From contig NC_086106.1 of assembly GCF_963921235.1 (NCBI RefSeq), forward strand, positions 18,662,001 to 18,726,000: a stretch of DNA of 64,000 bases, written 5' to 3'. Origin of the DNA: Mobula hypostoma. Taxonomy: Eukaryota. Shown here piece by piece: positions 540 through 59,445 of this stretch (its first letter is position 1; each line of letters begins with the position of its first letter). The translations under genes and the position numbers were made by a program. The notes below the pieces were generated by a model. That model searched no databases. It was not told the DNA's origin and was given only the letters and a program-made list of their open reading frames with translations.

Positions 540-800
540 TTTCAATGTAGTCTCAGGACCTCTTGGTACAATGAAATCCTCCTGTACACTGTTTCACCCA
601 CACCATCCAGCAGTGTCTTTGTGCCTGACTGTTACCCTGACACCCAAAGACTGTCAGTTACGATTACAGCAGCCAGTTTAACTGAAGGCTCAGTATTTGG
701 AGGTGTTGGAGTTATTATTGCAGGGTAACAAATTATTTGAATCAAAATGGCTTCGGACAAAATTGACATCTGAACTCCAACAGGAAGAATGAAAGCATCA
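540..800 (+). repeat. Fossil RTE RT C-terminal block (block A), paralog copy U0
   Basis: Near-identical motif string ATCCTCCTGTACACTGTTTCACCCACACCATCCAGCAGTGTC...AGCAGCCAGTTTAACTGAAGGCTCA also at 59105-59385 (minus) and five other sites. Confidence 0.7.
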
Positions 801-30534: not shown

Positions 30535-32949
30535 AGCTGACAAGCCAGATGCTTTTACGGGGACTGATACTGGGGGGAGTTAGTATGGCCTTATCGAAAA
30601 ATACCTTTTTGTCTTTATGTCACACTTATGCCAGTCAACAAAGTGAAGAGTTGGACTCTTGTTGGGTGTGTGTAAAGATAGCTCAGCATGCTGCCCAGGG
30701 AATGTCCCTGGAAGGGGTCCTCCGAACGGAAGCAAAATGCTTTCTGTGTGACTTATGAATGAATTTAACCATCCTATTCCAACTTTAAAACAAGAGATTG
30801 GCAGAAGATGATAAACATAGAACATAGAATAGGACAACACAGTACAGGCCCTTCGGCCCACATTGTTGTGCCAACCCTCAAACTCTGCTTCCCATATACC
30901 CCCCCACCTTAAATTCCTCCATATACTTGTCTAATAGTCTCTTAAATTTCACTAGTTATCTGCCTCCACCACTGACTCAGGCAGTGTATTCCATGCACCA
31001 ACTATCCTCTGAGTAAAAAACCTTCCTCTAATATCCCCCTTGAACTTCCCACCCCTTAACTTAAAGCTATGTCCCCTTGTATTGAGCAGTGGTGCCCTGG
31101 GGAAGAGGCGCTAGCTATCCACTCTGTCTATTCCTTTTAATATCTTGTATATATCTATCATGTCTCCTCTCATCCTCCTTCTCTCCAAAGAGTAAACCTA
31201 AGCTCCCTTAATCTTTGATCATAATCCATACTCTCTAAACCAGGCAGCATCTTGGTAAATGTCCTCTGTACCTTTTCCAATGGTTCTGCATCCTTCCTAT
31301 AGTGAGGCGACCAGAACTGGACACAGCACTCCAAGTGTGGCCTAACCAGAGTTTTATAGAGCAGCATCATTACCTCACGGCTCTTAAACTCTATCCCTCG
31401 ACTTATGAAAGCTAACACCCCATAAGCTTTCTTAACTGCCCTATCCACCTGTGAGGCAACTTTCAGGGATCTGTGGACATGTACCCCGAGATCCCTCTGC
31501 TCCTCCACACTACCAAGTATCCTGTTATTTACTTTGTACTCTGCCTTGGAGTTTGTCCTTCCAAAGTGTACCACCTCACACTTCTCCAGGTTGAACTCCA
31601 TCTGCCACTTCTCAGCCCACTTCTGCATTCTATCAATGTCTCTCTGCAATCTTCGACAATCCTCTACACTATCCACAACACCACCAACCTTTGTGTCATC
31701 TGCAAACTTGCTAACCCACCCTTCTACCCCCACATCCAGGTCGTTAATAAAAATCACAAAAAGTAGAGGTCCCAGAGCAGATCCTTGTGGAACACTACTG
31801 TTCACAATCCTCCAATCCAAATGTACTCCCTCCACCAGGACCCTCTGCCTTCTGCAGGCAAGCCAATTCTAAATCCACTTGGCCAAACTTCCCTGGATCC
31901 TATGCCTTCTGACTTTCTGAATAAGCCTTCCCTGTGAAAATTTGTCAAATGCCTTATTAAAATCCATATGGATCACATCCACTGCACTATGCTCATCTAT
32001 ATGCCTGATCACCTCCTCAAAGAACTGTGATGTCAGGGAAGGGGATTGTGGATGTACCTGCTTCAAAGGATGGTACCTCCATACCCCGACGGAGGAAAAA
32101 AAGATGCCCTTCTTTGAGTTAGTACTGTAATATGGCGGGGGGGGGGAATGGGACATTTCTGGGTCATAGCTCTTGTACTGAACAGAGGCGGTACGTGGGG
32201 AAAGAGCTTATCCTTGGTTTCCAGGGCTGCCAGGCAAAACTGGGAATGTGTCCCCAGGAAATTGGACGGCCTGCTGTTATTTGGCCCATATAGTGCCCTC
32301 CATGCATCTTATAAAAGATATATCGCAACACCCTTATTTAAGGCGAAGTAAGCGAGGGATAACGGAAAGTGAAAGGTTTTGGATGGTAGCATTTCCCTCA
32401 TATGGTGTGGCACGAAATTCACGAGAAATTATTAATATGGCAGCCGCTCTAGAGAAATTGGCCAATGACACTGCCGATGCCCTAACTGACGTGCAGACGC
32501 AAATGAAAGACCTAACAACAGAAGTAATTGCCCTTAGGATGGTAGCCTTGCAAAATAGAATGGCCCTGGACCTACTCTTAGCCAAAAAAGGAGGGACATG
32601 TGCCTTGGTAGGGTAGGGATGCTGTACTTGTATTCCCGATGATTTAGAAAACATAACTGACTTTAGTCAACACATAAGGGGAAAAATTGAGGAGATTAGA
32701 AAGATAAGGAAACAGTTTAAGAAATTTGGTTTAGGAACAAAATGGTGGGAAATAATAGAGGAATGGTTTTCTGGCTGGGGAAACTGGATTACCCATGGGA
32801 TAATTATATTGGTAATGGTATATGTTTTAGGGTGCTGTGTATGTGGAGCATTACGATCGTGTTGTTATCAGTTAATGAAAAGAGCCTTACTCGGATCTGA
32901 AAATGTCCCTATGATACCCCAGATGGTGAGAGAAATGCGCAGAAGGTGA
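30531..32949 (+). pseudogene. env: ERV2 env (gamma-type), split by CR1 at 30813-32027
   Basis: Signal peptide, CWVC (CXXC), furin site RSKR, ISD LQNRMALDLLLAKKGGTC, CX6CC containing one TAG, hydrophobic TM GIIILVMVYVLGCCV. Confidence 0.93.
30813..32027 (-). mobile_element. CR1 3' portion inserted in env
   Basis: ORF 31170-31835 PQGSALGP, FADD; CTATGTT tail at 30813. Confidence 0.95.
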
Positions 32950-36500: not shown

Positions 36501-38189
36501 CCCAGATGAGGGTGAAGTGGTTCATTTTGGTAGGTCAAATATGATGGCAGAATATAATATTAATGGTAAGACTCTTGGCAGTGTGGAGGATCTGAGGGAT
36601 CTTGGGGCCCGAGTTCATAGGACACTTAAACAGCTGCGCAGGTTGACTCTGTGGTTAAGAAAGCATACGGTGTATTGGCCTTCATCAATCACGGAATTGA
36701 GTTTAGGAGCCGAGAGGTAATGTTGCAGCTATATAGGACCCTGGTCAGACCCCACTTGGAGTACTGTGCTCAGTTCTGGTCGCCTCACTACAGGAAGGAT
36801 GTGGAAACCATAGAAAGGGTGCAGAGGAGATTTACAAGGATGTTGCCTGGATTGGGGAGCATGCCTAATGAGACAGATTGAGTGAACTCGGCCTTTTCTC
36901 CTTGGAGCGATGGAGGATGAGGGGTAACCTGATAGAGGTGTATAAGATGATGAGAGGCATTGATCGTGTGGATAGTCAGAGGCTTTTTCCCAGGGTTGAA
37001 ATGGCTGCCGCAAGAGGGCACAGGTTTAAGGTGCTTGGGAGTAGGTACAGAGGAGATGCCAGGGGTATTTTTTTTATATAAACGCAGAGAGTGGTGAGTG
37101 CATGGAATGGGCTGCCAGCAACGGTGGTGGAGGCGGATACGATAGGGTCTTTTAAGAAACTTTTGGATAGGTACATGGAGCTTAGAAAAATAGAGGGCTA
37201 TGGGTAACCCTAGTAATTTCTAAGGTCGGGACATGTTCGGCACAACTTTGTGGGCTGAAGGGCCTGTATTGTGCTGTAGGTTTTCTCTGTTTCTATGCTT
37301 CTATATCATGGTCTCCATCAGAAACATTCCGGACCCTGGCACATGGGAGGCAAGCTACCAGCCGTGTTTCTTTCCTATGACCACAGAATCACCTGTCTGA
37401 CCCCTAACTAGAGTCCCCTATCGCTGCTGCCATCCTCTTCCTTTCCTTACCCTTCTGAGCCACAGGGCCAGACTCTGTACCAGAGGCGCGACCACTGCTG
37501 CTTCCCCCAGGTAGGCTGTCCCCCGCAACAGTACTCAAGCAGGAATACTTACTGTTAAGGGGGACAGCCACTGAGGTACTCTCTAGTACCTGCTTTTTGC
37601 CCTTCCCTCTCCTGACTATTACCCACTTCTCTGTCTCCTGTGGTCCCGGGTTGACTACCTGCCTATATCTCCTCTCTATCACCTCCTCACTCTCCCTGAC
37701 CAGATGAAGGTAATCGAGCTGCAGCTCCAGTTCCCTAATGCGGTCTCTAAGGTGCTGCAGCCTGACGCACCTGGTGCAGATGTGGTCGTCTGGGAGGCTG
37801 GGAGTCTCCAGGGCCTCCCACATCAGACACCAAGCACAGAAAACCCGCCTCACACACATACTCTGTCTTTATTTTAAACAGATAGCCTACCTGGCCTCGA
37901 CCCTTTATCACCGAAGCCTCATTGAGCCAAAGCCTTCTTACTCTGTCTCCCACTACTCTGTCCCCCGCACCTCCGATGTCCGCTCTGTAAATCTGTCTTC
38001 CTTTTAAACTCTTCCCGCTGTTCTCACTGGCCGACTTCCACATGCATGCGTAGTCGTGCCCTGCTCAAACCGCTGAAGAAATAACCATCACCTTTCAACT
38101 CTGCTCGATTTTAAAATGTTCCCACTGTTCTCACTGGCCGACCTCCACGCACTTGCGCAGTCGTGCCCCGTTCAAACCACTGAAGAAAT
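33518..38189 (-). mobile_element. CR1 LINE with 5'UTR, ORF1 (zinc finger/leucine zipper, esterase), endonuclease and RT; 3' end cut at the ERV LTR
   Basis: ORF 37404-37859 CAWC..CTRCVRLQHLRDRIRELELQLD; VNIGTNDIG; NARSI; SDHN; DFRKAFD; PQGSVLG. Confidence 0.93.
36032..37302 (+). mobile_element. CR1 3' portion nested in the ORF1 esterase region of the previous CR1
   Basis: FADD and RPHLEYCAQFWSP; TTCTATG tail; host ORF1 resumes at 37303; ATATC on both sides. Confidence 0.9.
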
Positions 38190-38615
38190 GAGGGGAGATT
38201 TGATAAAATCATGAGGATGCAGCTGTGATCAATCCACACAGTCTTTTACCTAAAACTGGGGAATCAAGAACTAGAGGGCTTAAGTTTCAACTGAGAGGAG
38301 AAAGATTTAATAGGAATGTAAAGGATTATTTTAAAACAGAAATAGTGGAAAATATACGAAATATGCTACCAGAGGAAGTGGTTGAGTTAAGTTAATAACA
38401 ACTTTTAAAAGGCACTTGGACAGGTACATGGAGAGGAACATTTTGGAAGGTTATGGGCCAAACACTGAGAAATGGGACTCGTCTGGATTGGCACCTTGGT
38501 CAGCGTAGATGACTTTTGCTAAAGGCCTGTTTCCATGCTGTAGGACTCTATTAATCTACACTAAGGGCAATTTACAGTAAACAATTAACCTACAAACAAG
38601 CATGTCTTTGGGCCA
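38190..38615 (+). mobile_element. CR1 3' end plus V-SINE (HE1-like) fragment, shared among paralogs
   Basis: Same junction TAGGACTCTATTAATCTACAC at 47892-47913 and, in shortened form, on minus at 54680-54697; V-domain-like CAATTAACC...GTCTTTGG. Confidence 0.75.
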
Positions 38616-38619
38616 CATT

Positions 38620-39425
38620 GCAGTGTAACATATCCACCTGAAGAGCTCCTGTGGCCTCAGGACTTCCTGACACAATGGATTCCTCCTGTGCACTTTCACC
38701 AGAACTGTCCAGCAACCCCTGTCTCTCCGTAACACTGACACCCAGTGGCTCAAGGTTGCTATTACAGCAACCAGTTTGATCGAAGCCTCAATAACTTCTC
38801 TCAGAGGTGTTTCTCTGCCCCCCCCCCAGTGGTTACAGGTTGTCACTACAAGGTACCAAATGCTGTGCGTCAAGTTAACTTTAATGCAGACACAAGAGAC
38901 TGCAGATGCTGGAATCCAGAGCAATGCATAATCTGCTGGAGAAACACAGTGATTTCAGCAGCATTGATGGATGGAAAGAAACTGCATCAGGTCAGTACAA
39001 ATTAGCATCAGGTTTACCACAGGCAGAATGTAATCATCACCAAAGCAAAATAAAACCTGCTCAGGTTACATTGCAGAGAAAAAAATACTCTTGAAGACAC
39101 TGGACAGAAAATACCCATGGTGCATCAGTGGTGGAGGGAATGATGTGGAGTGTAGCTGGGCAGACTATATACATCACCAAGTGTGCCAGCTCATGAGATG
39201 CCAATGATCATCTCGACACAATTGTAAAATAGCAAGAACAGCAAAAAAAAAAGCTAAAGCTGAGTCTGATGAAGAACAGTTCAGATCAAATCCATATTGA
39301 AGCTGCTGTCTAAAAGCATGAGATTCCCTGCTGGCTGACTTCATCCAATGGTTTATCATTGAGGTCTATCCATGCACACAAATGAACCACGGTAATCCTC
39401 AGTGAAGAACAGGGGCTCATTCAAA
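38620..39425 (+). mobile_element. Fossil RTE RT C-terminus and 3' end (blocks A and B) with a PLE tail between them (U1)
   Basis: Degenerate LQWLQVV (cf. ISWxDKVTNEEVL) and ITKAK..CSGYI..TLLKTLDG (cf. KLRYFGHI..LEK..LEG). Confidence 0.65.
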
Positions 39426-39589
39426 AGACAGTCTGTTTCACATTGGAAAGTGGGACAGCAGAAACAGTGAGACAGGTAGCATTGTGTGAAGAACAGAAAT
39501 CACAGACAAATTGTATGACATAAAATGATGTGACTAGCAGGTTTTCAAACTTTGACAGCTTTATACAGGGGAAGCTGCAAAGAGGGAGG

Positions 39590-39810
39590 ATGAAGGAGAG
39601 ACAGTCAGACTGGGAATGGAGAGGAAGAATGATGGCGAGAGGAAAGAATGGGCAAGATGGAGAGAGAATGGATCAGATATAGTGAATCTGAAAGAGAAAT
39701 GACAAAGGAGAAGAGAGAGTAATAACAAAGATCGAGAAAGAGATTGACCAAGAGAACAATGGAGATGGAAATGGAAAGAGATAAGGAGAACGAGTGGGAA
39801 AGGGAATGAT
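39590..39810 (+). repeat. GA-rich low-complexity tract
   Basis: Purine-rich GAGA/GGAA run; paralog at 48960-49200. Confidence 0.85.
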
Positions 39811-39934
39811 GTCTGATGGGCAAAGCCACCAGGAGAAAGCTAGGATTGTATAGAATGTCACTGTAGAGCCCTGCACTGTCTGTGAGATACCAACTGGTGA
39901 ATGAATCTCCTGTTGTTTCCCTGTCAGAATTTTC

Positions 39935-40483
39935 TATGTGACATATTCATCTGAAGGTCTTCTGCAATGAATCAGGATTTCCTGGCACAGTGGAATCCTC
40001 CTGTGCACTGTTTCCTCACACTGTCCTGCAGTTCCTCTGTGCCTGACCATTACACTGATACCCAGAAACTGTCAGTTATTATGAGCAGCCAGTTTGACTG
40101 AAATGTCAATAATTGGAGGTGTTCATATGACACCCAGTGATTGCAGGTTATCGCTGCAAGCAACCAAATTCTTTTCACACAATGAGCCTCCGGAAGATCA
40201 TCTGTATTTTCTGGGCAAGAAAGATCTCCAACCATGTCCTTATCCTTCAGTGTCAGCAAAGCTTGGGAACATGATGAGGCCAACTCCATCATGAAGACTT
40301 CATTAGATCCCTGAAGACCAGAGGAAACACAGGAGACCAAAGACAACTTGGCACCATACCATAGACATGGAAATGAGAACCCTGAACCCTGGGGCACAAT
40401 AGAGAAGATGGCCAAGGACAGAGAGAGATGCAAGGCCTTCACTGCTGCCCCAAACGCCAGTGGCATAACAGGCAGTAAGTAAA
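39935..40483 (+). mobile_element. Second block-A copy followed by a younger RTE 3' end
   Basis: Block A motif then GRPKTTW-like RTE end with AGTAAGTAA tail; same arrangement at 49322-49928. Confidence 0.75.
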
Positions 40484-40519
40484 TGGAGCAGGGAACTCAA
40501 ACTAAAATGGACCTGAAAT

Positions 40520-41995
40520 GTAAACTGTCCTTCACACAAGACAGTGGCACTTCTCAGAGTGCAGCAATGTCAAACATACAAAGGCCACTCCCACCACAGG
40601 GTCTTTGCCAAAGGAAGAGAGGGGAACAATCAGAATAAAGGGCAGGCAGACACAGTGAACCAGACTGTGCCTGACCCGACCCTGTTCCTGCCACCATTGG
40701 TTAAAAGGCTTCACGGTCCTCCAATGAAACATGAACCTTCTCAAATTCAGCACTCCCCTCACCTCCTTGAAGCTTACCTTCTCTGAACACACTGCCCTCC
40801 ACTCTCTCCAACCAATCCCAAACTTACCATCAAAGCTGTAGACAAAGGGGGTGCTGTTGTAGTGTGGTGGACTGACCTCTACCTTGCTGAGGCCAGGCAG
40901 CAATTCTCAGACACCTCCTCATACTTACCCCTTGAAGAGGACCCCACTCCAAACCATCAGAAAACTGTCTCCAACAGCATGACTGACCTTCATGACTGAC
41001 CTCATCAATTCTGGAGATCTCCTATCCACTGCCTCCAAACTGATTGCTCCATAACCCCACACTGCTCACTTCCACCTCCCACCCGAGATCCACAAACATG
41101 ACTGTCCGGGCAGGCCTTTTGACTCTGCCTGCTACCACCCCACTGAAATCGTGTCCTCATATCTTTGCTCCGTTCCATCGCCCTGTTTCAGTCCCTTCCC
41201 ACCTCCACCTGCGATACTTCTCATGCTCTCAATCTCCTCACTAACTTTTAATTCTCTGGCCCTGACTACCTCATTTTCCCCATAGATGTTCAGCTCCTAC
41301 ATCTCCCATCAAGAAGGCCTTAAATCTCTCCACTTCTTTCTCAATAAAAGAACCAACCAGTTCCCCTCTATCAGAACCCTCCTCTATCTGGCAGAACTGG
41401 TCCTCACTCTCATCGAATTTTTCTTTGGCACTTCCCAGTTTCTCCATACTCCAGTGGTAGCAATGGGCACCCTCATGGGCCCCAGCTATGCCTGCATCTT
41501 CATTGGCTGTGTAGAATAGTCCATGTTCCAAGCATTCCCATGTGATGCTCCACATCTTCCTCTGCTACATTGACAACTGCATTGGTGCTGCTCATGCACT
41601 CATGCTGAGCTTAACAATTTCATCAAGTTTACCTTTAACTTCCACCCTGCCCTTAAAATCACTTGGTCTATTTCTGACAACTCCCTTCACTTTTTTTGAT
41701 CTCTCTGTCTCCATCTCTGGAGACAAACTGTCAACGAACTTCTCTTATAAACCTATCAATTCCCACAGTTGTCTTAACTATACCTCTTCCCACACTGTCT
41801 CCTGTATAAATGCTATTTCCTTTTCTCATTTCCTTTGTCTCCACCGCATCTGTTCTCAAGATGTGGCTTTCCTTTCCAGGGCATCAGAAATGTGTCCTTC
41901 TTCAAAGAATAGGGTTTCCCTTCCTCCACCATTGATGCTGCCCTCACCTGCATCTCTTCCATTTCCCAAACATCTGAGCGCACCCCATCTTCCCG
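40520..41995 (+). mobile_element. Penelope-like element (RT)
   Basis: IKAVDKGGAVVVW, VAMGTLMGPSYAC and YIDNCIG motifs. Confidence 0.9.
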
Positions 41996-45981: not shown

Positions 45982-46929
45982 GTCTAACTGATGTCCATTA
46001 TTCCTGGAATCATCAAATATTCTCTTAGGGCGACTCATCACTCCTCTGATGCTGTGTCCTAAATTATAGTTAATATATACATTGGGATAATATAAACAGA
46101 TATAAAACTGATTCTTCTTTCGGCAGAATCAGTTTTACATATATATAGACATCATTGTTTCCTTCCCTTCCTGATTATTTGGGCTGTAAAAGGATTACTA
46201 GCGAATGAGATGATGTCATCAGCAGGTTACCTGTATATTTTGGCTGTTCTTGCTGTGGAGATGGTGTGAATACTATATACTGTATGAGTATAATTCTCAA
46301 TGCCACAGAACTACACACTACAATGACAGAAGCAGAATAAAGAAGAGAACGGTATGAGAACGTGGCAGCACCACCAGGAAGAAGATGTGAAAGAATTGAT
46401 CAGCTCAGGAGACTGATATCAAAGGGAAAAGATGTTCTTCATCTGGTCATTTGGGTTTTCCAGCTTCTTGACATTCTCCAGAAGTTAGCAGACTGAAAAG
46501 GGAATGGTCAGCATGGTATGCATCCTTGACAATACCACAAGTCTTCCTGAGACATTGCACCATGAAGACTGACTGGATGGGAGGAATTAACAAGCCTCTG
46601 ATGGACTGGGCTGCGTTTAGCACTCTCTTCAGGTTCAGACGGTCAAGAGCAGAGCAGTTGCTGTCCAGGAGTGTATTGCAACCTGTCCAAGTGCTTTCTA
46701 TGCAAGTCTATAGAAATTTGAGAGATTCCTGGCAGACATACTAAACCTCAGAGATTTAACAAAAGGAATATGCTAATGATCTTTCTTGATCACAACATCA
46801 GTGTGAAGGGACCTGGTGAGGTTGCTGGTGATATGAGTGCCAAGTTGAAGCTGTTGAATATTTTTACAGCAGCTCCTTTGATGAGTTGGTGCTGTAACTG
46901 GCCACAGAGTTACGGGTCTACAGGGAGTA

Positions 46930-47900
46930 GATCCATGACAAATGGTGTACCTCAGGGGTCAGTGCTGGGTCACTTGCTGTTTGTCATCCACATCAAAGAT
47001 TTGGATGAGAATGTACAAGGCATCATTAGTAAGCTTATAGATGACGTTAAAGTAAGTAGTAAAGTGAACTGTGAAGAAGATGATCAAAACTTACAGGAGT
47101 ATGTTGATTAGCTGAGCAAATAGGCAGAGCTAGGTTTTAATTCAGATAAATGCGAGGTGTTGCATTTTGGAAAGTCAAACTAATGTAGGACATTCAGGGT
47201 AAACGACAGGGCATCGGGTAGTGTTGAGGAACAGAGGGACCTTGGAGTTTAAGCACATGGTTCACTGAGAGTGAGTGTTAGATAGGATAGTGAGGAATGG
47301 TTTTGGCATACTGGTCTTATTTACACAGAATATTCATTCTGAATGTTGGGTGGTCATGGAGCAGTTGTACGAGGCACCGGTGAGGCTGCACTTGCAGTAT
47401 TATGTTCATTTTATTCACCAAGCTGCAAGAAAGATATCATTATACTGGAAAGAATGCAGAAAAGGTTTACAAGGATGCTGCCAGGACTCTAGGGACTGAG
47501 TTATAGGGAGAGGTTGGACAGGCTAAGGCTTTATTCCTTGGAGTGTAGGAAAACGAGGGGAGATTTGATAAAATCACGAGGACACAGCTGTGACAAATCT
47601 TCTCAGTCTTTTACTGAAGATTGTGAATCAAGAACTAGATGGCTTAGGTTTCAACTGAGAGGGGCAAAATTTAATAGAAATGTGAAGGATTTTTTATACA
47701 GAAATGGTGGAAAATATGTGGAATATGCTACCAGAGGAAGTGGTTGAATTAAGTTAATAACAACTTTTATAAGGCACTTGGACAGATACATGGAGAGGAA
47801 CATTTTGGAAGGTTATGGGCCAAATGAGATTCGTCTGGATTGGTATCTTGGTCAGCATTGGCGACTTATGCTAAAGGTATGTTTCCATGCTGTAGGACTC
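46930..47900 (+). mobile_element. CR1 RT 3' part (shared block; paralog 54680-55610 minus)
   Basis: PQGSVLGHLLFVIHIKDLD in ORF 46770-47111. Confidence 0.9.
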
Positions 47901-47984
47901 TATTAATCTACACTCAGGGCTATCTACAGTAGCCAATTAACCCAACAACAAGCATGTCTTTGGTGTGTGGGAGGAAAACCTGTT

Positions 47985-49928
47985 GCAATGTGACATATTC
48001 ATCTGAAGAGCTCCTGTAGCCTCAGGAACTCCTGGCACAATGGACTCCTCCTGTGCACTGTTTCACCAGTACTGTCCAGCAACTCCTGTCTGTCTGTCTG
48101 TAACACTGACACCCAGTGGCTCGAGGTTGCTATCGCAGCAGCCAGTTTGACTGAAGCCTCAATACCTTCTTTCAGAGGTGTTCCTTTGACCTCCAGTGGT
48201 TACAGGTTGTCATTGCAAGGTACCAAGTGCTTTCCATCAAGTCAACTTCAATCCAGACACAAGAGACTGCAGATGCTGGAATCCAGACAAACACACAATC
48301 TGCTGGAGAAACACAGCGATTTCAGCAGCATTGATGGCTGGAAAGAAACTGTTGAACCCCTGCATCAGGTCAGTTCAAATTAACACCAGGGTTACCACAG
48401 ACAGAATGTAATAATGACTGAAGCAAAATAAACCTGCTCAGGTTACATTGCAGAGAAAAAATACTCTTGAAAACACCGGACAGACAATATCCAGGGTGCA
48501 TCAGTGGTGGAGGGAGTGAAATGGAATGTAGCTGGGCAGACCTTATACATCACCAAGTGTGCCAGCTCATGAGATGTCAATGGTCATGTCGACACAGCTG
48601 TAAAATAGCAAAAACAGCAAAAATAAGCTAAAGATTGGTCTGATGAAAATCAGTTCAGTTCAAATACATATTGAAGCTGCTGTCTAAAGGCATGGGGTTC
48701 CAGTTGGCTGCCTATGTTCAAATGTTTATCACTGAAGTCTATCAATGGAACCAATGAGCCTCTGTAATCCTGAATGAAGAACAGGGGCTGATTCAAAAGA
48801 CAGTCTGTTTCAGATTGGAAAGTGGGAGAGCAGAAACAGTGAGACAGGCAGTGTTGTGTGACGAACAGAAATCACAGGAAAATTGTGTGAAATAAAATGA
48901 TGTGATTGGCAGGTTTCAAAACCTGGCAGCTTTATACAGGGGAAGCTGCAATAAGGAAAGAGGAAGGAGAGAGAGTCAGTCTGGGAATGGAAAGGAAGAG
49001 TGATGGGGAGAGGAAAGAATGGACAAGATGGAGAGAGAGAATGGATCAGATATATGTGAACCTGAAAGAGAGATGACAATGGAGAAGAGAGACTGAAGGA
49101 GAGAGAGAATAAAAAAAAGATCAAGAAAGAGATTGACCAAGGGAATAATGGAGATGGAAATGGAAAGAGATAAGAAGAATGAGTGGGAAAGGGAATGATG
49201 TCTGATGGGCAAAGACACCAGGAGAAAGCATGGATTGTATAGAATGCCATTGTAGAGCCCTGCACTGTCTGTGAGATACCAACTGGTGAATGAAACTCCT
49301 GTCGTTTCCCTGTCTGAATTTTCAATGTGACATATTCATCTGAAGGTCTTCTGCAATGAATCAGGGCTTCCTGGCACAGTGGAGTCCTCCTGTGCACTCT
49401 TTCACCCACACCGTAGAGCAGTCTCTCTGTGCCTGACTATTACACTGAGACCCAGAGACTGTCAGTTATTATCAGCAGCCAGCTTGACTGAAGCACCAGT
49501 AATTGGAGGTGTTCCTCTGACCGTCCCCTCCCCCAGTGATTGCAGGTTATCATCGTAAGCTACCAAATTCTTTTCACACCAAAAGCCTCTGGAAGATTAT
49601 TTGTATTTTCTGAGCAAGAAAGATCTCCAACCACATCCTACTCGTTCAGTGTCATCAAGAGGACATGGCCGCAATCACCTTGATGAAGCTTTGGAGATGG
49701 GTTGGGAACATGATGAGGCCAACTCAACTCCATCATCATGACTTCATTGGATTCCTGAAGACCAGAGGAATCACAGGAGACCAAAGACAACTCGGCACGA
49801 TACCACAGAGACAGAAATGAGGACCCTGAACTACACCTGGGCACAATAGAGAAGATGGCCAAGGACAGACATAGATAGAGGACAATCATTGCTGCCCTAA
49901 ATGCAAGCAGAATAATGGGCAGTAAGTA
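47985..49928 (+). repeat. U2 copy of A - PLE tail - B - GA tract - A2 - RTE end
   Basis: Collinear with 38620-40483. Confidence 0.9.
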
Positions 49929-49959
49929 AATGGAGCAGGGAACTCAACTAAAATGGACC

Positions 49960-51925
49960 CAGAATGTAAATTGTCCTTCACACAGCACAGTGGCATTTCC
50001 CAGAATGCAGCAATGTCAAGCATGTAAAGATCATTCCCACCATTGGAAGAGAAGGGAACTACCAGAATAAAGGGAAGACAGACACAGTGAACCAGCCTGT
50101 GCCTGACCCGACCCTGTTCCCGCCACCACTGGTTAAAACGCTTGACAGTCCTCTAATGAGACATCAACCATCTCAAATCCAGCACTCCTCTCTCCTCCTC
50201 GAACGTGACTCTTTTTGAATGCACTGCCCTCCTCTCTCTCTGCACCAATCCCAACCTTACCATCAAAGCCACAGACAAAGGCAGTGCTGTTGTGGTGTGG
50301 TGGACTGACCTCTACCTTGCTGAGGCCAGGCAGCAATTCACTTTCACCATAGATGTTCAGATCCTAATTCTCTAATCAAGGAAGCCTTAAATCTCTCCAC
50401 TTCTTTCCCAATAAAAGAACCAACCAATTCTCCGCCAGAGCCCTCCTCCATCTGGCAGAACTGGTCCTCATCCTCATCAAATTTTCCTTTGGCTCCTCCC
50501 ACTTCCTCCATACTCCTGTCATGGTTCCACTTGGTTGTTCCCCTTTAACACTCCTTTCTCCCTGATTATGCCCTAATTTCAGCCATTAGATTTCAATTGC
50601 TGCTAGTTTACTTAATTACAGCACACCTGGTTTGCATCAGAGACTGTGAAATAAGTACGATGGCATTACTACACAGGTCGCCAGTTTGTTGGTCTATTCT
50701 TGTGTGAAACTTTGTTCTCTCATCCGCTTAGAACCTTTAGTTCTAAGTTTCGTTCCAAGTTCTGCTCTAGTTTCAAGATAGTCCCTGTAAATCCTGTCTC
50801 CTTGTCAAGATTCCTCCGGTTTGCTGTTCTACGTTCACGTCTATGCCAGCATCCCCAACTCAGTCAACGTGCCGGTGTCCTGCACTTGGGTTCTCCTCAG
50901 TTGCACTGTGCAACAACTCCAGGGGTAGCCATGGGCACCCTCATGGGCCCCAGATAATCTGCCTCTTCATTGGCTGTGTAGAACAGTCCATGTTCCAAGC
51001 CTTCCCAGGCAATGCTCTCTGTCTTCCTCTATTACATTGACAATTGGATTTGGGCTGCTTCATGCACCCATGCTGAGCTCATCGATTTCATCAACTTTGC
51101 CTCTAACTTCCACCCTGCCCTTAAAATCACTTGGTCTATTTCTGACACCTCCCTTCACTTTCTAGATCTCTCTGTCTCCATCTCTGGGAACAAACTGTCA
51201 ACAAACTTCTTTTATATAACTATCATTTCCCATGATTATCTTGGCTAAACTGCTTCCCATACTGTCTCCTGTAAAAATACTATTGCCTTTTCTCATTTCC
51301 ATCATCTCCACTGCATCTGTTCCCAGGATGTGGTTTTCCTTTCCAGGACATCAGAAATGTGTCCTTCTTCCAAGAATGGGGTTTCCCTTCCTCCACCATT
51401 GATGCTGCCCACACCCGCATCTCCTCCATTTCCCAAACATCCGAGCTCACCCCGTCTTCCCACTGCCTTATCAGTGATAGAGTTCCTTTTGTCATTACCT
51501 ACCACCCCATGAGGTTCTGCATCTGACTCATCATCCTCTGCAACTTCCACCATCTCCAAAGGGATACTTCCACTAAACATATTTTACTTCCCCCCCCTCC
51601 ATTTTTCATATGGATCCCTCCCAACATGATTCCCCTGTCCATTCATCCTTCCCCACTAATCTCCCTCCTGGCATTTATCCCTGCAAGTGGCCAAAGTGCT
51701 ACACCTGCCCATTCACCTTCTCCCTCACCTCCATTCAGGGCCCCAAGCAGTCTTTCCAGGTGAGGCAACACTTCACCTGCAAATCTGCTGGGGTCATCTA
51801 TTGTGTCCAGTGCTCCTGATGTGGCCTCCTCTATATTGGTGAGATCTGTCGTAAATTGGGAAACCACTTCATCAAACACCTCCATTCCAACCACCAAGAT
51901 GAGGCAACCCTCAGGGTGCAGGTAG
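49960..51925 (+). mobile_element. Penelope-like element (RT to GIY-YIG), paralog of 40520-41995
   Basis: IKATDKGSAVVVW, YIDN and GVIYCVQCS..LYIGE motifs. Confidence 0.9.
50517..50915. mobile_element. Solo LTR with perfect 5-bp TSD
   Basis: TGTCATGG...GTGCAACA; ACTCC at 50512-50516 and 50916-50920; single ACTCC at 41448-41452 in the paralog. Confidence 0.92.
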
Positions 51926-53215
51926 GAAATTCTGATCATAGCAATGAGAGGTTGAAGATGTCTTTGAATGCCCCTGCCAGTTGGTTAGCACAGGTTTTCA
52001 AAGCCTTACCTGGTACTCCATCGGGCCTTGCCACCTTGCGAGGGTTCACCCTCTTGAAAGACAGCCTGATGTTGGCCTCCAAGACAGAGATCACAGAGCC
52101 AGCAGGTGCTGCAGGGACTCGCACAGCTGTAGTTCCTTTTCTCCTTTTCAAAACAAGCATAAAAGGTGTTGAGCTCATTTGGGAGTGAAACATCACTGCC
52201 ATTCATGATGTTGGGTTTTGTTTTGTGGGAAGTAATGGCCTGAAAATCCTGCCAGAGTTGATGTGCATCCAGTGTTGCCTCCAACCTCTCCCAGAATTGT
52301 TTCTTGGCTCTTGAAATAACCCTCTGCAAGTTATGCCTGGTTTTCTTATACAGACATGAGTTGTCAGACTTAAATGTCACAGATCTAGACCCAGCAGACT
52401 ACGAACCTCCTGGTTCGTCCATGGCATTTGGCTTAGGAATGTACAGTAAGATTTCATAGGCACACACACATCTACACAGAATTTAATAAACCTGGTGACA
52501 ACTGTGGCATACTCATCCAGACTCAAAGATGACTCCCTGACCATAGTCCAGTCCATCAATTCAAAGCAGTCCTGTAAGCACTCCTGCCCTTTCCTGGTCC
52601 ATACCTTCTTGGTCCTCACTACTTGTGCTGCAGTCTTCGGTCTCTGCCTATGCTTACCAAAGTGTGGGTGTGGGAGAGTAGGATAGACACGCTTAAATTT
52701 AGTGTAACAGTGTTCCAGTGTGTTGGTTACTCTGGTACTACAGGGGATTTGTAGATAATCATTGTTGAAATCTCACTCAGCCCCTAAAATGGCCAGCACT
52801 TCATTGTGAGGTATTGCGGGTCTGGTGGACAATATTGGGAGGTCACCAACACACATTCACCATGAGGAGTTGATCATGAAGCAAGGCTGCTTTTGAGAGA
52901 CTTGACTGACCTATCTTGGTGGTGGAACTGAACCCGTCTGTCTTTATCTCTGTGTCCGGTGTGGAAAGGGTTAACTATGATACCATGAAACAAAGGATGC
53001 AAGTGGTCCTAATGTCTCTCTGATACAGCACCCTGGCTCTGAGATCTTCAGTTTTATTTACCAGGGACTGTACAATTGCCAGCAAGGTAGTTGGTATTGG
53101 GAGTTGAAAACCTCATTTTCTTAAACACACCATCAGACCAGGACGTTGAATCCACTTTCTCCAGCGGCTTCCTAAAGGAGCAGTGTGCCAACCACAGTCT
53201 AACTATTTTCTCTCA
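51926..53215 (-). mobile_element. Rex1/Babar LINE 5' half (endonuclease to RT start)
   Basis: SLVNKTEDLRARVLYQRD, CFMINSSW and [23 protein letters not shown]. Confidence 0.9.
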
Positions 53216-53431
53216 GTTTTAAGCAGCAATAAGTTGTTCAATTGTATCAAAACTTCACCACTGACTGTACACATCTTAGACGCAGATGTGGTTCTCAGCA
53301 ATTGCAGGCTAAAACAAGAATATTTGATGATCACACCAGGGCTGCACCATTATTCAATATTGAACTGGCCTGGCAGAGTTCACAGCACAATGTAAACAAT
53401 TTCGTGAACGGGGTGAGTCCCAGGACCCTAC

Positions 53432-53738
53432 CTTGGACGTTCTCCACTTGCTTCTTGATACAGGTATTGGAGGGCGGATAAATCACTGTACAGCTGAAGA
53501 CTGATTCTGTCTTCCAATCCTGCAAACTCACGGTCAGGAAGTGTCTGGCACTGAAAGTCCACCCCTGGTTGGTATAGCACTGGTGTTGGAGGTGATGATG
53601 GTGCTGCCTTTCTCCCAGGTGACATCCAATTGGTCTGGGTAGAATCCAGAGACCACACACTCCAGTGTGGCCATTTTCCTATTCTTCGTCTCTTCCTGAG
53701 GTGGAGGCTGTCAGGATTTTGAATAAAGACAAACAATT
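53432..53738 (-). pseudogene. Orphan immunoglobulin heavy-chain constant (C1-set) exon, IgW CH4 / IgNAR C3 type, frameshifted
   Basis: Acceptor TCTAATCCCCAG and donor CAAG/GTAGG (phase 1). Mosaic translation: QPPPQEETKNRKMATLECVVSGFYPDQLDVTWEKGSTIITSNTSAIPT / QGWTFSARHFLTVSLQDWKTESVFSCTVIYPPSNTCIKKQVENVQ. Both canonical Cys and the Trp are present. Confidence 0.9.
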
Positions 53739-53792
53739 CTGGGGATTAGAAATGGAAAACGTCAGAATCTTACTGGAGATATTCCTATCGGT

Positions 53793-54612
53793 TGTTGAAT
53801 CAGCCCCTGTTCTTCCCTTCCCTGTAATAAAGATTACAGTGGCTCATTTATATCCATGAAAAGCCTTCAATGACAAATAATTGGCCAAAGTCAGCCAGTA
53901 GCAACCCCGTGCTTTTACACAGTAGCTTCAAGATGGATTTGACCTGACCTCTCGTTCATGGGTCTCATCTTCAGTAATTTTGTTTGGCTGCTTTTGCTAT
54001 TTCACAGCTGTGTCGACATGATCAGAGACATCTCATGAGTTGGCCACTTGTATGTTCTGCCCAGCCACATTCGATTTCACTCCCTCCATGAGTGATGCAT
54101 GGTGAATATTGTCTGTCCAGAACTTTCAACAGTATTGTTTTCTCTACAATGTAACCTGAGCAGGTTTTATCTTGCTTTGGTGATAGTTGCATTTTGCCTG
54201 TGGTAGCCCAGATGCTAATTTGTACTGACCTGATGCAGGGATTCAACAGTTTCTTTCCAGCTATCAATGCTGCTGTAGTTGCCGTGTTTCTCCAGCGCAG
54301 ATTGTGCGTTGCTCTCGATTCCAGCATCTGCAGTCTCTTGTGTTTGGAAGGAAGTTGACTTGACTGAAGTATTTGGTACCTTGTAGTGACAACCTTCAGC
54401 CACTGGGGGTCAGAGGAACACCTCTGAAATAAGGTATTGAGACTTCAAACCGGCTGCTGTAATAGCACCCTCAAACCACTGGGTGTCAGTGTTACAGATT
54501 AGTCAGAGGGGGTTGCCCGACTGCTTGGGTGAAACAGTGCACAGGAGGAGTCCATTGTGCCAGGAGGGCCTGAGACTACAGGAGCTCTTCAGAGGAATAT
54601 GTCACATTGCAA
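53793..54612 (-). mobile_element. Fossil RTE blocks A and B (U3)
   Basis: Reverse-complement match to 47985-48795. Confidence 0.85.
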
Positions 54613-54679
54613 CGCGGTTTCCTCCCACATCTCAAAGACCTACTTGTCGGTAGGTTAAATGGCCACCGTAAATTGCCCT

Positions 54680-55610
54680 CAGTGATAGAGTCCTACAGCA
54701 TGGAAACAGGTCTATAGCACAAGTCGTCCATGCTGACCAAGATGAAAATCCAAGCTAGGTCCCATTTCCCAGTGTTTGACCCATAACCATCCAAAATGTT
54801 CCACTCCGTGTATCTGTCCAACTGCCTTTGAAAAGTTATTTACTTAACTCAAACACTTCTTCTGGTAACATATTCCATATGTTCCACCATTTCTGTTTAA
54901 AGAATCCTTTAAATTCCTGTTAAATCTTTCCCCTCTCACTGAAACCTATGCCCTCTAGCTCTTGGTTCCCCATCTTAATAAAAGACTGTGGACATTTACC
55001 ACAGCTATGCCCCTCATGATTTTACGCATCTTTATAAAAGTGCCTCTCAGACTCCTGTATTCCAAGCAATATAGCCTTAGCCTGTCGAACCTCTCCCCAT
55101 AACACGGACCTTGAGTCCTGGCAACATCCTTATAAATCTCTTCTGCACTCATTCAGTTTAATTGCCTCTTTCCTGCAGCTTGCTGACTGAAGTGCAGCCT
55201 CACAGATGCCTTGTACAACCGCACTGTGACCTCCCAACATTCACACTCAATGTTCTGTCTAATGAAGGCCAGCATACCAAAAGCCTTTCACCATCCTAAC
55301 TACTTTTGATTCCATGTCCTTTTAATCCACAACACTGTCCAGGGCCCTGCCGTTTACCATGAAAGTCCAACCTTGGTTTGACTTTACAAATTACGACACC
55401 TCACACTTATCTGAATTAAAATCCAGTTGCCACTCCTTACTCAGCTAATCAACATACACCTGTAATGCTTGATAATCTTTCACAAACTTCACTTTACCAC
55501 TTGTTTTAATATCGTCTGTGAACGTACTGACCATGTTTTGTACATTCGTATCCAAATCTTTGATGCAGATGACAAAAAAAAATGGCCAAGCACTGACCCC
55601 TGAAGTACAC
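54680..55610 (-). mobile_element. CR1 RT 3' part (U3)
   Basis: Reverse-complement paralog of 46930-47900. Confidence 0.88.
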
Positions 55611-55621
55611 CTACTTGTCAT

Positions 55622-55724
55622 GGACATACTCCCTGTTCACCGATAACTGTGGGGCCAGGTACAGCTCCAACTCATTAACAGAGTTTGTCTGGCACACAGT
55701 TATGGGTGTACAGGGAGTATGTCC
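55622..55724. repeat. Inverted repeat (37/36-nt arms, 30-nt loop) derived from Rex1 RT sequence
   Basis: GGACATACTCCCTGTTCACCGATAACTGTGGGGCCAG versus the reverse complement of CTGGCACACAGTTATGGGTGTACAGGGAGTATGTCC. Confidence 0.92.
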
Positions 55725-58999: not shown

Positions 59000-59445
59000 C
59001 TCCACAGATACTACCTGTCCTGTAATTTCATTAGTTTTTATCTCTTATTTGCAATGTGTAATTATTTGTCCCTCAGTGATGATTTCATTCTTCCTATTGG
59101 AGTTCAGATGCCAATTTTTGTCTGCAGCTGATTTGATCTGAACAATGTGTTACCCTGCAATAATAACTACAACCACTAGGGGTGAGAGGAACACCTCCAA
59201 ATATTGAGCCTTCAGTTAAATTGGCTGCTGTTTTGTTAACCGACAGCCTCTGGCTGTAAGTGTAACAGTCAGGCAAAAAGACACTGCTGGATGGTGTGGG
59301 TGAAACAGTGCACAGGAGGATTCCACTGTGCCAGGAGTTCCTGAGTCTGCAGGAGCTCTTTGGATGAATACATCACGTTGAAATATGACATCCTTCTTCA
59401 AAATTCATGCTTGTTGGTAGGTTATTGCCACTTTAAACTGTGCTT
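59000..59445 (-). repeat. Block A plus flank (U4), inverted paralog of 540-890
   Basis: Reverse complement of 59041-59110 matches 770-850 (CTGAACTCCAA..GGAAGAATGAAA..CATCACTGAGGGACAAATAA). Confidence 0.85.

What the first reader, a model, noticed from the sequence alone, without database searches (positions are those of the whole stretch)
53432..53738. Orphan IgW/IgNAR-type constant exon stranded in a TE mosaic
Seen: a 307-nt minus-strand exon with intact AG acceptor, GT donor and phase-1 end, encoding a full C1-set Ig fold (LEC..GFYP..VTW..FS..LTV..W..FSC). It has a frameshift near its 5' end and a 3n+1 deletion in the PT-ALE-QG loop (about 10 nt if the template is PTALEQG). Knowledge: this pattern (GFYPD, PTALEQ, HPPS) is the recalled IgNAR C3 / IgW CH4 domain of cartilaginous fish, whose Ig genes occur as multiple V-D-J-C clusters. 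Seen: no V, D, J, RSS or other recognisable C exon elsewhere in 64 kb; flanks are a fossil RTE about 55 nt upstream and Rex1 about 220 nt downstream. Inference: a single C exon was carried out of an IgW/IgNAR cluster by segmental duplication, or the cluster was eroded to one exon.
Basis: partly seen in the sequence, partly recalled or inferred. Interest (0 to 1): 0.72.

Follow-up and report, generated by a model that had tools for sequence, protein, structure and literature searches.

The report
Dead hybrid IgW constant-exon relic
This is a broken, apparently unexpressed leftover of a devil-ray IgW antibody heavy-chain gene: the start of one constant-domain exon fused out of frame to most of the next, lying among jumping elements between working IgW genes. 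It is an ordinary gene fossil.

Summary
The exon at 53432-53738 (minus strand) is real. It has an AG acceptor, a GT donor and a clear C1-set immunoglobulin domain.

**Identity.** It is IgW, not IgNAR. It is 79-85% identical to the repeated CH4-type domains of Mobula IgW heavy chains, 48-55% to CH4 of named shark IgW, and 34% to IgNAR C3.

**The 5' "frameshift" is a fusion junction.**
- Bases 53709-53738 are the first 30 bases of a CH3-type exon (reads ELFVFIQNPD).
- From 53708 the sequence is a CH4-type exon that has lost about its first 9 codons.
- The join is one base short, so it is out of frame.

**Other damage.** The 10-base deletion (codons ALE plus one base, between 53567 and 53566) is confirmed against expressed paralogues. 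CpG decay is visible.

**Surroundings.**
- About 57 bases of upstream intron and 70-100 bases of downstream intron survive, so the piece is a DNA-level copy and not a retrocopy.
- Repeats abut both sides.
- The 64 kb holds no other Ig exon and no RSS.
- The locus is single-copy, and its flanks are present about 2% diverged in a second species.
- No RNA contig matches the exon itself.

**Position.** Earlier notes of this scan place working IgW genes 29-57 kb before the window and 163-208 kb beyond it. The exon is therefore an inter-cluster relic. The scan had not noted such a hybrid relic before.

Interest is low.

The parts
53739..53795 (-). Remnant of the intron that precedes CH3-type IgW exons, including the AG acceptor at 53739-53740
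   Evidence: DNA contigs of paralogues in two species lie on it at 80% likeness or more (depth 292 and 1890, against about 12 for the locus's own contig in organism A). They diverge exactly behind 53795 (loose ends). AG read.
53709..53738 (-). First 30 nt of a CH3-type IgW exon (phase 1; reads ELFVFIQNPD)
   Evidence: 9 of 10 residues match ELSVFIQNPD, which opens every CH3-type domain of the Mobula IgW chains. Organism-B DNA contigs aligned from 53709 upward continue with letters reading (I)EEMWID, the normal continuation of a CH3-type exon.
53432..53708 (-). CH4-type IgW exon body lacking about its first 9 codons, with a 10-nt deletion between 53567 and 53566; it ends in phase 1 before a GT donor
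   Evidence: 79-85% identity to Mobula CH4-type domains. RNA contigs aligned up to 53708 continue with letters reading EIRSPKVTL, the normal CH4 start. RNA contigs carry 10 extra nt behind 53566 that read ALE. Pfam C1-set.
53359..53431 (-). Remnant of the intron that follows CH4-type exons, with the GT donor at 53430-53431; its lower limit is uncertain (53332-53359)
   Evidence: Seven paralogous DNA contigs in organism A cover 53404-53409, and one gapped contig reaches 53359. RNA depth falls to 0 below 53417. GT read.
53796..55678 (-). Old LINE-type repeat copy directly abutting the IgW piece; orientation inferred
   Evidence: Two other copies in the window (48796-46878 at 77% and 39424-38204 at 78%) start their match exactly at 53795. 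An RT-like motif was seen by eye on the plus strand of the copy at 46722-47108, which is inverted relative to this one.
52947..53331 (.). High-copy interspersed repeat abutting the downstream intron remnant; LINE-like reading frames follow at 51939-52772 on the minus strand
   Evidence: More than 100 contigs at 80-90% likeness in each of two species at 52994-53087. Joints link 53043-53148 to 53207-53305 in other copies. The endonuclease/RT-like frames were read by eye only; Pfam found nothing.

Best explanation
A non-functional, single-copy relic of the constant region of an IgW (IgD-like) antibody heavy-chain gene. It lies in the repeat-filled spacer between working IgW clusters of a devil ray (Mobula).

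About 460 bp of IgW DNA survives (roughly 53340-53795, minus strand):
- 57 nt of the intron before a CH3-type exon;
- the first 30 nt of that exon;
- then, joined directly and one base short of frame, a CH4-type exon from its 'PPPQEE' codons to its end;
- then 70-100 nt of the following intron.

The most likely history (inferred):
1. A CH3-CH4 cassette, as part of an IgW cluster or a partial copy of one, was duplicated as DNA.
2. An internal deletion of roughly 1-2 kb removed the rest of the CH3 exon, the intron and the first codons of CH4.
3. A 10-nt deletion and CpG decay followed.
4. The rest of the copy was lost or replaced by LINE-type repeats.

It does nothing now. It cannot encode an Ig domain in any frame, no transcript matches it, and it decays neutrally.
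For: Shown:
- C1-set domain.
- Nearest kin are Mobula IgW chains with 5-6 tandem CH3-CH4 pairs. Named IgW sequences place the match in the fourth C domain.
- The tree puts the relic inside the ray CH4-type group, with an end branch of 0.12 against a median of 0.035.
- The hybrid junction at 53709|53708 is shown from both sides by loose ends of paralogous contigs. The ELxVFIQNP motif opens the third C domain.
- The 10-nt deletion is shown by RNA contigs of the expressed paralogues.
- Intron homology on both sides and retained AG/GT show a DNA origin.
- Exact own contigs at single-copy depth span 53643-54224, across the junction and the repeat boundary.
- Contigs of a second species cover both flanks at about 2% divergence.
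- Every RNA contig listed on the exon differs from it by 9-15%, so these come from paralogues.
- 4 of the 12 listed relic-specific changes are CpG to TpG/CpA.
- No other Ig exon or RSS in 64 kb.

From the scan's index, not tested here:
- IgW genes lie 29-57 kb before the window and 163-208 kb beyond it.
Against: - No further IgW-derived sequence was found for 10 kb upstream or 53 kb downstream. Mobula IgW genes span only 35-42 kb, so an eroded cluster needs large later deletions.
- The 30-nt continuation of the paralogous intron does not reappear beyond the upstream repeat. That repeat is therefore not a simple insertion into an intact intron.
- Whether the second species shares the two lesions is probable (one single-copy-depth contig covers 53706) but not shown.
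- Only two small RNA data sets were laid, and as contigs, so rare transcripts cannot be excluded.
Confidence: 0.65

Rival explanations
1. Small-fragment capture. Only the ~460-bp piece ever arrived here. It came either as filler DNA at a double-strand-break repair or by template switching of a LINE reverse transcriptase onto an unspliced IgW pre-mRNA. No IgW cluster ever stood at this spot.
For: - The IgW-derived stretch is short and abutted directly on both sides by LINE-type repeats.
- The downstream LINE-like element has the same orientation as the exon.
- No other IgW sequence in 64 kb.
- The intron continuation is absent.
- The CH3/CH4 junction has no splice signals and little or no microhomology. 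That would also fit a template jump.
Against: - No target-site duplication, tail or other hallmark was identified.
- The repeat orientations and ends are inferred from degenerate copies.
- Retention of intron on both sides is equally expected for plain DNA duplication.
- The piece lies in the IgW region itself, where cluster birth and death is the simpler source.
Confidence: 0.25
2. One complete IgW/IgNAR-type C exon with a small 5' frameshift was moved out of an Ig cluster to an unrelated site by segmental duplication.
For: It is the only Ig exon in the window. Splice sites are intact. The CH4 / IgNAR C3 homology group is correct.
Against: - The first 30 nt belong to a different (CH3-type) exon.
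- IgNAR identity is only 34%.
- Neighbouring notes place the window inside the IgW region.
Confidence: 0.05
3. Still in use, as an alternative or non-coding exon of a neighbouring IgW gene or another transcript, or as a gene-conversion donor for the CH4 cassettes.
For: Both splice sites are intact. The phase-1 frame happens to stay open across all 102 codons. The relic has the same orientation as the IgW gene noted before the window's start (inferred).
Against: - The length is 3n+1, so inclusion would shift the frame. The open frame does not encode an Ig fold.
- No RNA contig listed on the exon matches it at better than about 91%.
- The end branch is long and shows CpG decay.
- It lies about 82 kb from the next V-D-J.
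Confidence: 0.03
4. Assembly artefact: a chimeric join of CH3 and CH4 reads from the repetitive IgW cassettes.
For: The IgW cassettes are highly repetitive. Logan's contigs break inside the exon at 53443-53643.
Against: An independent contig of the same organism matches 53643-54224 exactly at single-copy depth, across the junction and into unique flank. A second species has contigs across both exon ends and flanks.
Confidence: 0.02

Closest known systems
IgW (IgD-orthologous) heavy-chain CH4 domain of cartilaginous fish, e.g. Triakis scyllium 'immunoglobulin W heavy chain' and nurse shark 'IgNARC'
   Same: The best match lies in the fourth C domain: 48% identity to Triakis residues 455-549 and 55% to nurse shark residues 465-559. 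Mobula IgW CH4-type repeats match at 79-85%. Same phase-1 exon end and GT donor.
   Different: It lacks the normal CH4 start (EIKSPKVxL) and carries a CH3-type start instead. It has a 10-nt deletion, is out of frame, and is not linked to V, D, J or other C exons within 64 kb.
IgNAR C3 domain
   Same: Same homology group. IgNAR C-terminal domains are related to long-form IgW (review PMC5192425). Within Triakis IgNAR the best match is C3.
   Different: Only 34% identity. IgNAR domains fall outside the CH4-type group in the tree.
Relic constant-region exons of lost Ig genes, e.g. the remnant of the rabbit IgD gene (PMC5568218, title and abstract only)
   Same: Recognisable but dead C-exon fragments left inside an IgH region.
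   Different: Here the isotype is still present in many working copies nearby. The relic is a two-exon fusion in a multi-cluster locus.
Tandem C-exon cassette amplification in IgD/IgW genes (coelacanth, sturgeon, lungfish; review PMC5192425)
   Same: The source genes in Mobula carry 5-6 tandem CH3-CH4 pairs. Such arrays are prone to unequal and illegitimate recombination.
   Different: The junction here is not at homologous positions of the two exons and is out of frame. It is a deletion product, not a new cassette.
UrIg2, a non-rearranging elasmobranch antigen-receptor-like gene (PMC12227049; PDB 9dmx)
   Same: A multi-C1-domain gene with repeated two-exon units, linked to the Ig/TCR region. 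Automatic annotation also gives misleading names to such genes.
   Different: Per-domain scores to 9dmx are only 13.5-18.9 bits, against 39.8 bits for an IgNAR C domain (4q9c). The nearest full-length kin have a VH and CH1 of IgH type.

Membership tests
Immunoglobulin C1-set domain | Match to Pfam PF07654 above its gathering score | tested here: met
   34.9 bits against a cut-off of 21 for the first piece. The second piece scores 18.5 bits, just below the cut-off on its own.
Immunoglobulin C1-set domain | Two conserved cysteines and the tryptophan of strand C (LEC...VTW...FSC) | tested here: met
   Read directly, but the residues are split over two reading frames.
IgW heavy chain, CH4-type domain | Best similarity to the fourth C domain of named IgW chains, and placement in the CH4-type group of a domain tree | tested here: met
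   The CH4-type group is separated from IgNAR C1/C3/C5 and IgW CH2/CH6 at 93/86 support.
IgW heavy chain, CH4-type domain | Complete exon with its own N-terminus (KSPxVxLLPP) | tested here: not met
   Replaced by a CH3-type start, ELFVFIQNPD. The junction is at 53709|53708.
Functional Ig heavy-chain cluster (V-D-J-C) | V, D, J segments with RSS and further C exons nearby on the same strand | tested here: not met
   None in 64 kb.
Functional Ig heavy-chain cluster (V-D-J-C) | Open reading frame through the domain | tested here: not met
   Two frame breaks. The length is 307 = 3n+1.
Functional Ig heavy-chain cluster (V-D-J-C) | Transcripts matching the exon itself | tested here: inconclusive
   Every RNA contig listed on the exon in two runs is 9-15% different and carries the missing 10 nt. 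The RNA data are small and held as contigs only.
IgNAR | Closest similarity to IgNAR C domains | tested here: not met
   34% identity to C3, against 79-85% to IgW.
Processed (retro) pseudogene | Absence of introns and splice sites; exon-exon joins at splice junctions | tested here: not met
   Intron remnants on both sides and AG/GT retained. The CH3/CH4 join is not at exon borders.
Non-Ig C1 proteins (MHC, TCR, tapasin, beta-2-microglobulin) | Best hits to those families | tested here: not met
   The top solved structures are all Ig heavy chains, IgNAR and UrIg2. The top library hits are IgW chains.

The most novel reading that the evidence does not exclude
The ~460-bp IgW piece was copied from an unspliced IgW pre-mRNA by a LINE reverse transcriptase that switched templates. 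It sits head-on to the 5' side of a same-strand LINE-like element, and its internal CH3/CH4 join could be a second jump. That would be a footprint of germline IgW transcription and of LINE-mediated exon shuffling inside an antibody locus of a cartilaginous fish.
Probability: 0.1. Interest if true: 0.4.

Novelty: new member of a known kind. Interest (0 to 1): 0.15.

Why it matters
It matters little on its own. It is one more fossil of the birth-and-death turnover of antibody gene clusters in cartilaginous fish.

It has three modest uses:
- It marks a deletion between neighbouring CH3 and CH4 exons. This shows the kind of illegitimate recombination that the tandem CH3-CH4 cassette arrays of ray IgW genes undergo.
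- As a neutrally decaying copy shared by two Mobula species, it could serve as an internal clock for dating cassette amplification and gene conversion among the working copies.
- It warns annotators that a lone, splice-site-bearing C1 exon in this region is not an alternative exon.

Tried and rejected
- **Genomic DNA of the working Mobula IgW genes.** Fetching it for intron-by-intron comparison failed: the files are too large and only the gene spans were returned.
- **Single-exon ORFs from short genomic contigs.** A word-index protein search with the 115-aa read-through ORF found no candidate.
- **Pfam on ten reading frames flanking the exon.** It found nothing.
- **The 30-nt continuation of the paralogous intron beyond 53795.** Searched in the whole window with up to 7 mismatches: no match.
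- **Two weak tblastn hits** (14614-14742 and 32623-32775, E 0.02-0.03) were not supported by the profile search and are taken as chance.
- **An in-frame junction plus a separate 7-nt deletion.** Considered and rejected. The loose ends show that the junction itself supplies the frame error: one base of the CH3 codon plus one base of the CH4 codon.
- **UrIg2 as the source family.** Considered and rejected on scores.
- **RNA holders of the exon.** None was found.

Full report
**What is in the sequence.** On the minus strand the stretch 53738 to 53432 is bounded by ...cccc-AG and GT-agggt and is 307 nt long. No frame carries the Ig domain through.
- One frame reads PPPQEETKNRKMATLECVVSGFYPDQLDVTWEKGSTIITSNTSAIPT.
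- Another continues QGWTFSARHFLTVSLQDWKTESVFSCTVIYPPSNTCIKKQVENVQ up to the donor.
- The third opens the exon with (E)LFVFIQNPD.

Pfam's C1-set model hits both main pieces, at 34.9 bits (E 2e-8, cut-off 21) and 18.5 bits. Against solved structures, every top hit is an Ig heavy chain, an IgNAR constant domain (4q9c) or UrIg2. No MHC, TCR or tapasin chain leads. 4q9c gives 39.8 and 27.8 bits, the highest score among the single-domain chains listed.

**Which family.** An exhaustive HMMER search of 1.84 billion representatives with the 58-residue first piece gave 365 hits. The top hit scored 449 bits, summed over 11 matched domains. The leading clusters are predicted heavy chains of Mobula birostris and Mobula hypostoma. 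Automatic annotation calls them 'uncharacterized' or 'titin-like'. Stingray proteins named 'splenic IgW, short secretory form-like' follow.

A second search from one of these chains brought in named references:
- 'immunoglobulin W heavy chain' of Triakis scyllium;
- 'IgNARC' of the nurse shark, an old name of IgW (review PMC5192425).

Domain by domain, with XXX at the deletion:

| Compared with | Identity |
|---|---|
| CH4-type domains of the long Mobula chains | 79-85% |
| CH4-type domains of a second Mobula IgW type | 69-71% |
| Fourth C domain of Triakis IgW (455-549) | 48% |
| Fourth C domain of nurse shark IgW (465-559) | 55% |
| Best IgNAR domain, C3 of Triakis (350-442) | 34% |

A maximum-likelihood tree of 66 domains was built on 96 columns, so it is only coarsely resolved.
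- All CH4-type domains separate from IgNAR C1/C3/C5 and IgW CH2/CH6 at 93/86 support.
- The relic falls inside a 26-row group of Mobula and Hemitrygon CH4-type domains (91/88).
- Its end branch is 0.12, against a median of 0.035.

The isotype is IgW, not IgNAR.

**The 5' 'frameshift' is a fusion of two exons.** The long Mobula chains consist of V, CH1 and CH2, followed by five or six tandem pairs of a CH3-type and a CH4-type domain.
- Every CH3-type domain begins ELSVFIQNPD/N-IEEMW. The same motif opens the third C domain of named shark IgW and C2 of IgNAR.
- Every CH4-type domain begins (V)EIKSPKVxLLPPxQEE.

The relic begins ELFVFIQNPD and then runs straight into PPPQEETKNRK. Laying public contigs on the stretch at 80% likeness shows this from both sides.
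- RNA contigs of expressed paralogues align up to 53708. They then continue with letters that read EIRSPKVTL, the normal CH4 start.
- DNA contigs of a second species align from 53709 upward. They then continue with letters that read EEMWID, the normal CH3 continuation.

The junction is therefore at 53709|53708. It joins the first base of a CH3 codon to the third base of a CH4 codon, so it is itself one base short of frame. No separate small deletion is needed. None of the 199 fetched proteins has such a hybrid start.

**The second lesion and decay.** RNA contigs in both RNA runs carry ten extra bases behind 53566. On the minus strand they read ALE plus one base. One search lists twelve exon positions where the relic differs from most or all of the paralogous contigs laid there. 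Four of them are CpG to TpG/CpA changes in the relic: T to M, R to C and two silent. With the long end branch, this fits neutral decay. Total length is 3n+1, so even exon inclusion would shift the frame.

**Origin as DNA, and the limits of the IgW piece.**
- Paralogous DNA contigs keep aligning upstream of the acceptor as far as 53795 and then diverge.
- Downstream of the donor they reach at least 53404-53409 (seven contigs). One gapped contig reaches 53359.
- RNA depth stops at the exon borders.

Intron remnants and both splice sites are therefore retained, which excludes a processed retrocopy. About 460 bp (roughly 53340-53795) is IgW-derived.

Exactly at 53795 a repeat begins. It has two other copies in the window, matching from 48796 and from 39424 downward at 77-78% identity. 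An RT-like motif in the better copy was read by eye only. It suggests a LINE whose 3' side faces the IgW piece.

Downstream, 52947-53331 is a high-copy repeat, with more than 100 contigs per species. LINE-like frames follow it on the same strand. Pfam did not recognise those frames, so the family names are untested. Elsewhere the window holds clear RT and endonuclease domains. 'TE mosaic' is a fair description.

**Alone in the window, but not outside the Ig region.** Three searches found nothing but this exon:
- tblastn with eleven IgW/IgNAR chains;
- profile HMMs built from 152 C domains and 16 VH domains against all six frames;
- an RSS scan.

Mobula IgW genes span 35-42 kb, so this is not part of an ordinary gene.

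However, the scan's index places several IgW features close by:
- an IgW V-D-J unit 28.6-29.3 kb before the window's start;
- the short-form (C2) tail 38.5 kb before it;
- five C3-C4 cassettes 41.5 kb before it;
- further IgW genes 163-208 kb beyond the window's end.

I could not read those stretches, so these are positions taken from the index, not results of mine. They make the relic an inter-cluster fossil, about 82 kb upstream of the next V-D-J and apparently on the same strand. It is not an exon carried away from the Ig region.

**Reality of the locus and its age.**
- Contigs of the same organism match 53076-53443 and 53643-54224 exactly at single-copy depth. The second spans the junction and the repeat boundary.
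- Contigs of a second organism cover 53041-53449 (9 differences and 1 gap in 410) and 53712-54271 (8 differences and 5 gaps in 555). One contig at single-copy depth covers 53706.

The locus is therefore not an assembly artefact, and it predates the split of two species about 2% apart. Whether both lesions are shared is probable but not shown. Every RNA contig listed on the exon differs from it by 9-15%, so these come from the working paralogues. Neither search for sequencing runs found an RNA run on record that holds the exon.

**How it most likely came about.**
- *Shown:* IgW CH3/CH4 hybrid, DNA-level origin, two frame breaks, no matching transcript found, single copy, repeats on both sides.
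- *Inferred:* a CH3-CH4 cassette, as part of a cluster or partial cluster copy in this birth-and-death locus, suffered an internal deletion of roughly 1-2 kb between the tenth codon of CH3 and about the ninth of CH4. It then suffered the 10-nt deletion, while the rest of the copy was deleted or overwritten by LINE-type elements.

The main rival is that only the 460-bp piece ever arrived, as repair filler or by a LINE template switch. In its favour are the short length, the direct abutment of repeats, and the failure to find the intron's continuation. I give the eroded or partial cluster copy 0.65 and fragment capture 0.25.

**Comparison with what is known, and verdict.** IgW genes in multiple clusters, variable numbers of C exons and tandem C-exon duplication in IgW/IgD are established (PMC5192425, PMC12227049). 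Relic C exons of Ig genes are also known (PMC5568218). Interest is low.

Noticed in passing
P0163 (Mobula hypostoma, 1623 aa), P0001 (M. birostris, 1428 aa), P0171 (Pristis pectinata, 1550 aa), P0173 (Chiloscyllium punctatum, 1299 aa): Predicted IgW heavy chains with five or six tandem CH3-CH4 domain pairs are annotated 'titin-like' or 'uncharacterized'. The amplification occurs in rays, a sawfish and a bamboo shark. The scan's earlier notes already describe the Mobula genes.
   Followed up: partly
window 38186-40906 and 47551-50339: A block of about 2.8 kb is duplicated in direct orientation 9.4 kb apart at 83-84% identity. It contains the LINE-type repeat that also abuts the IgW relic.
   Followed up: partly
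window 546-707, 38618-38864, 39936-40177, 47983-48236, 49320-49576, 54367-54612, 59181-59383: A short interspersed unit of about 250 nt recurs at least seven times in the window at 69-82% identity, sometimes twice within one larger repeat copy.
   Followed up: no
window 50980-52190, plus strand: Reading frames that look by eye like the end of a Penelope-type reverse transcriptase followed by a GIY-YIG-like cysteine motif. Pfam gave no hit, so this rests on memory only.
   Followed up: partly
window 53431-53745, minus strand: The phase-1 frame set by the CH3-type start stays open through the whole hybrid exon (105 codons) although it does not encode the Ig fold. This is probably chance.
   Followed up: no
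window 53400-53780: About 9% of the sampled 31-letter words of the exon stretch occur in presumed RNA runs of many differently coded organisms. This suggests a short, very conserved or repeat-derived word set. It was not located.
   Followed up: no
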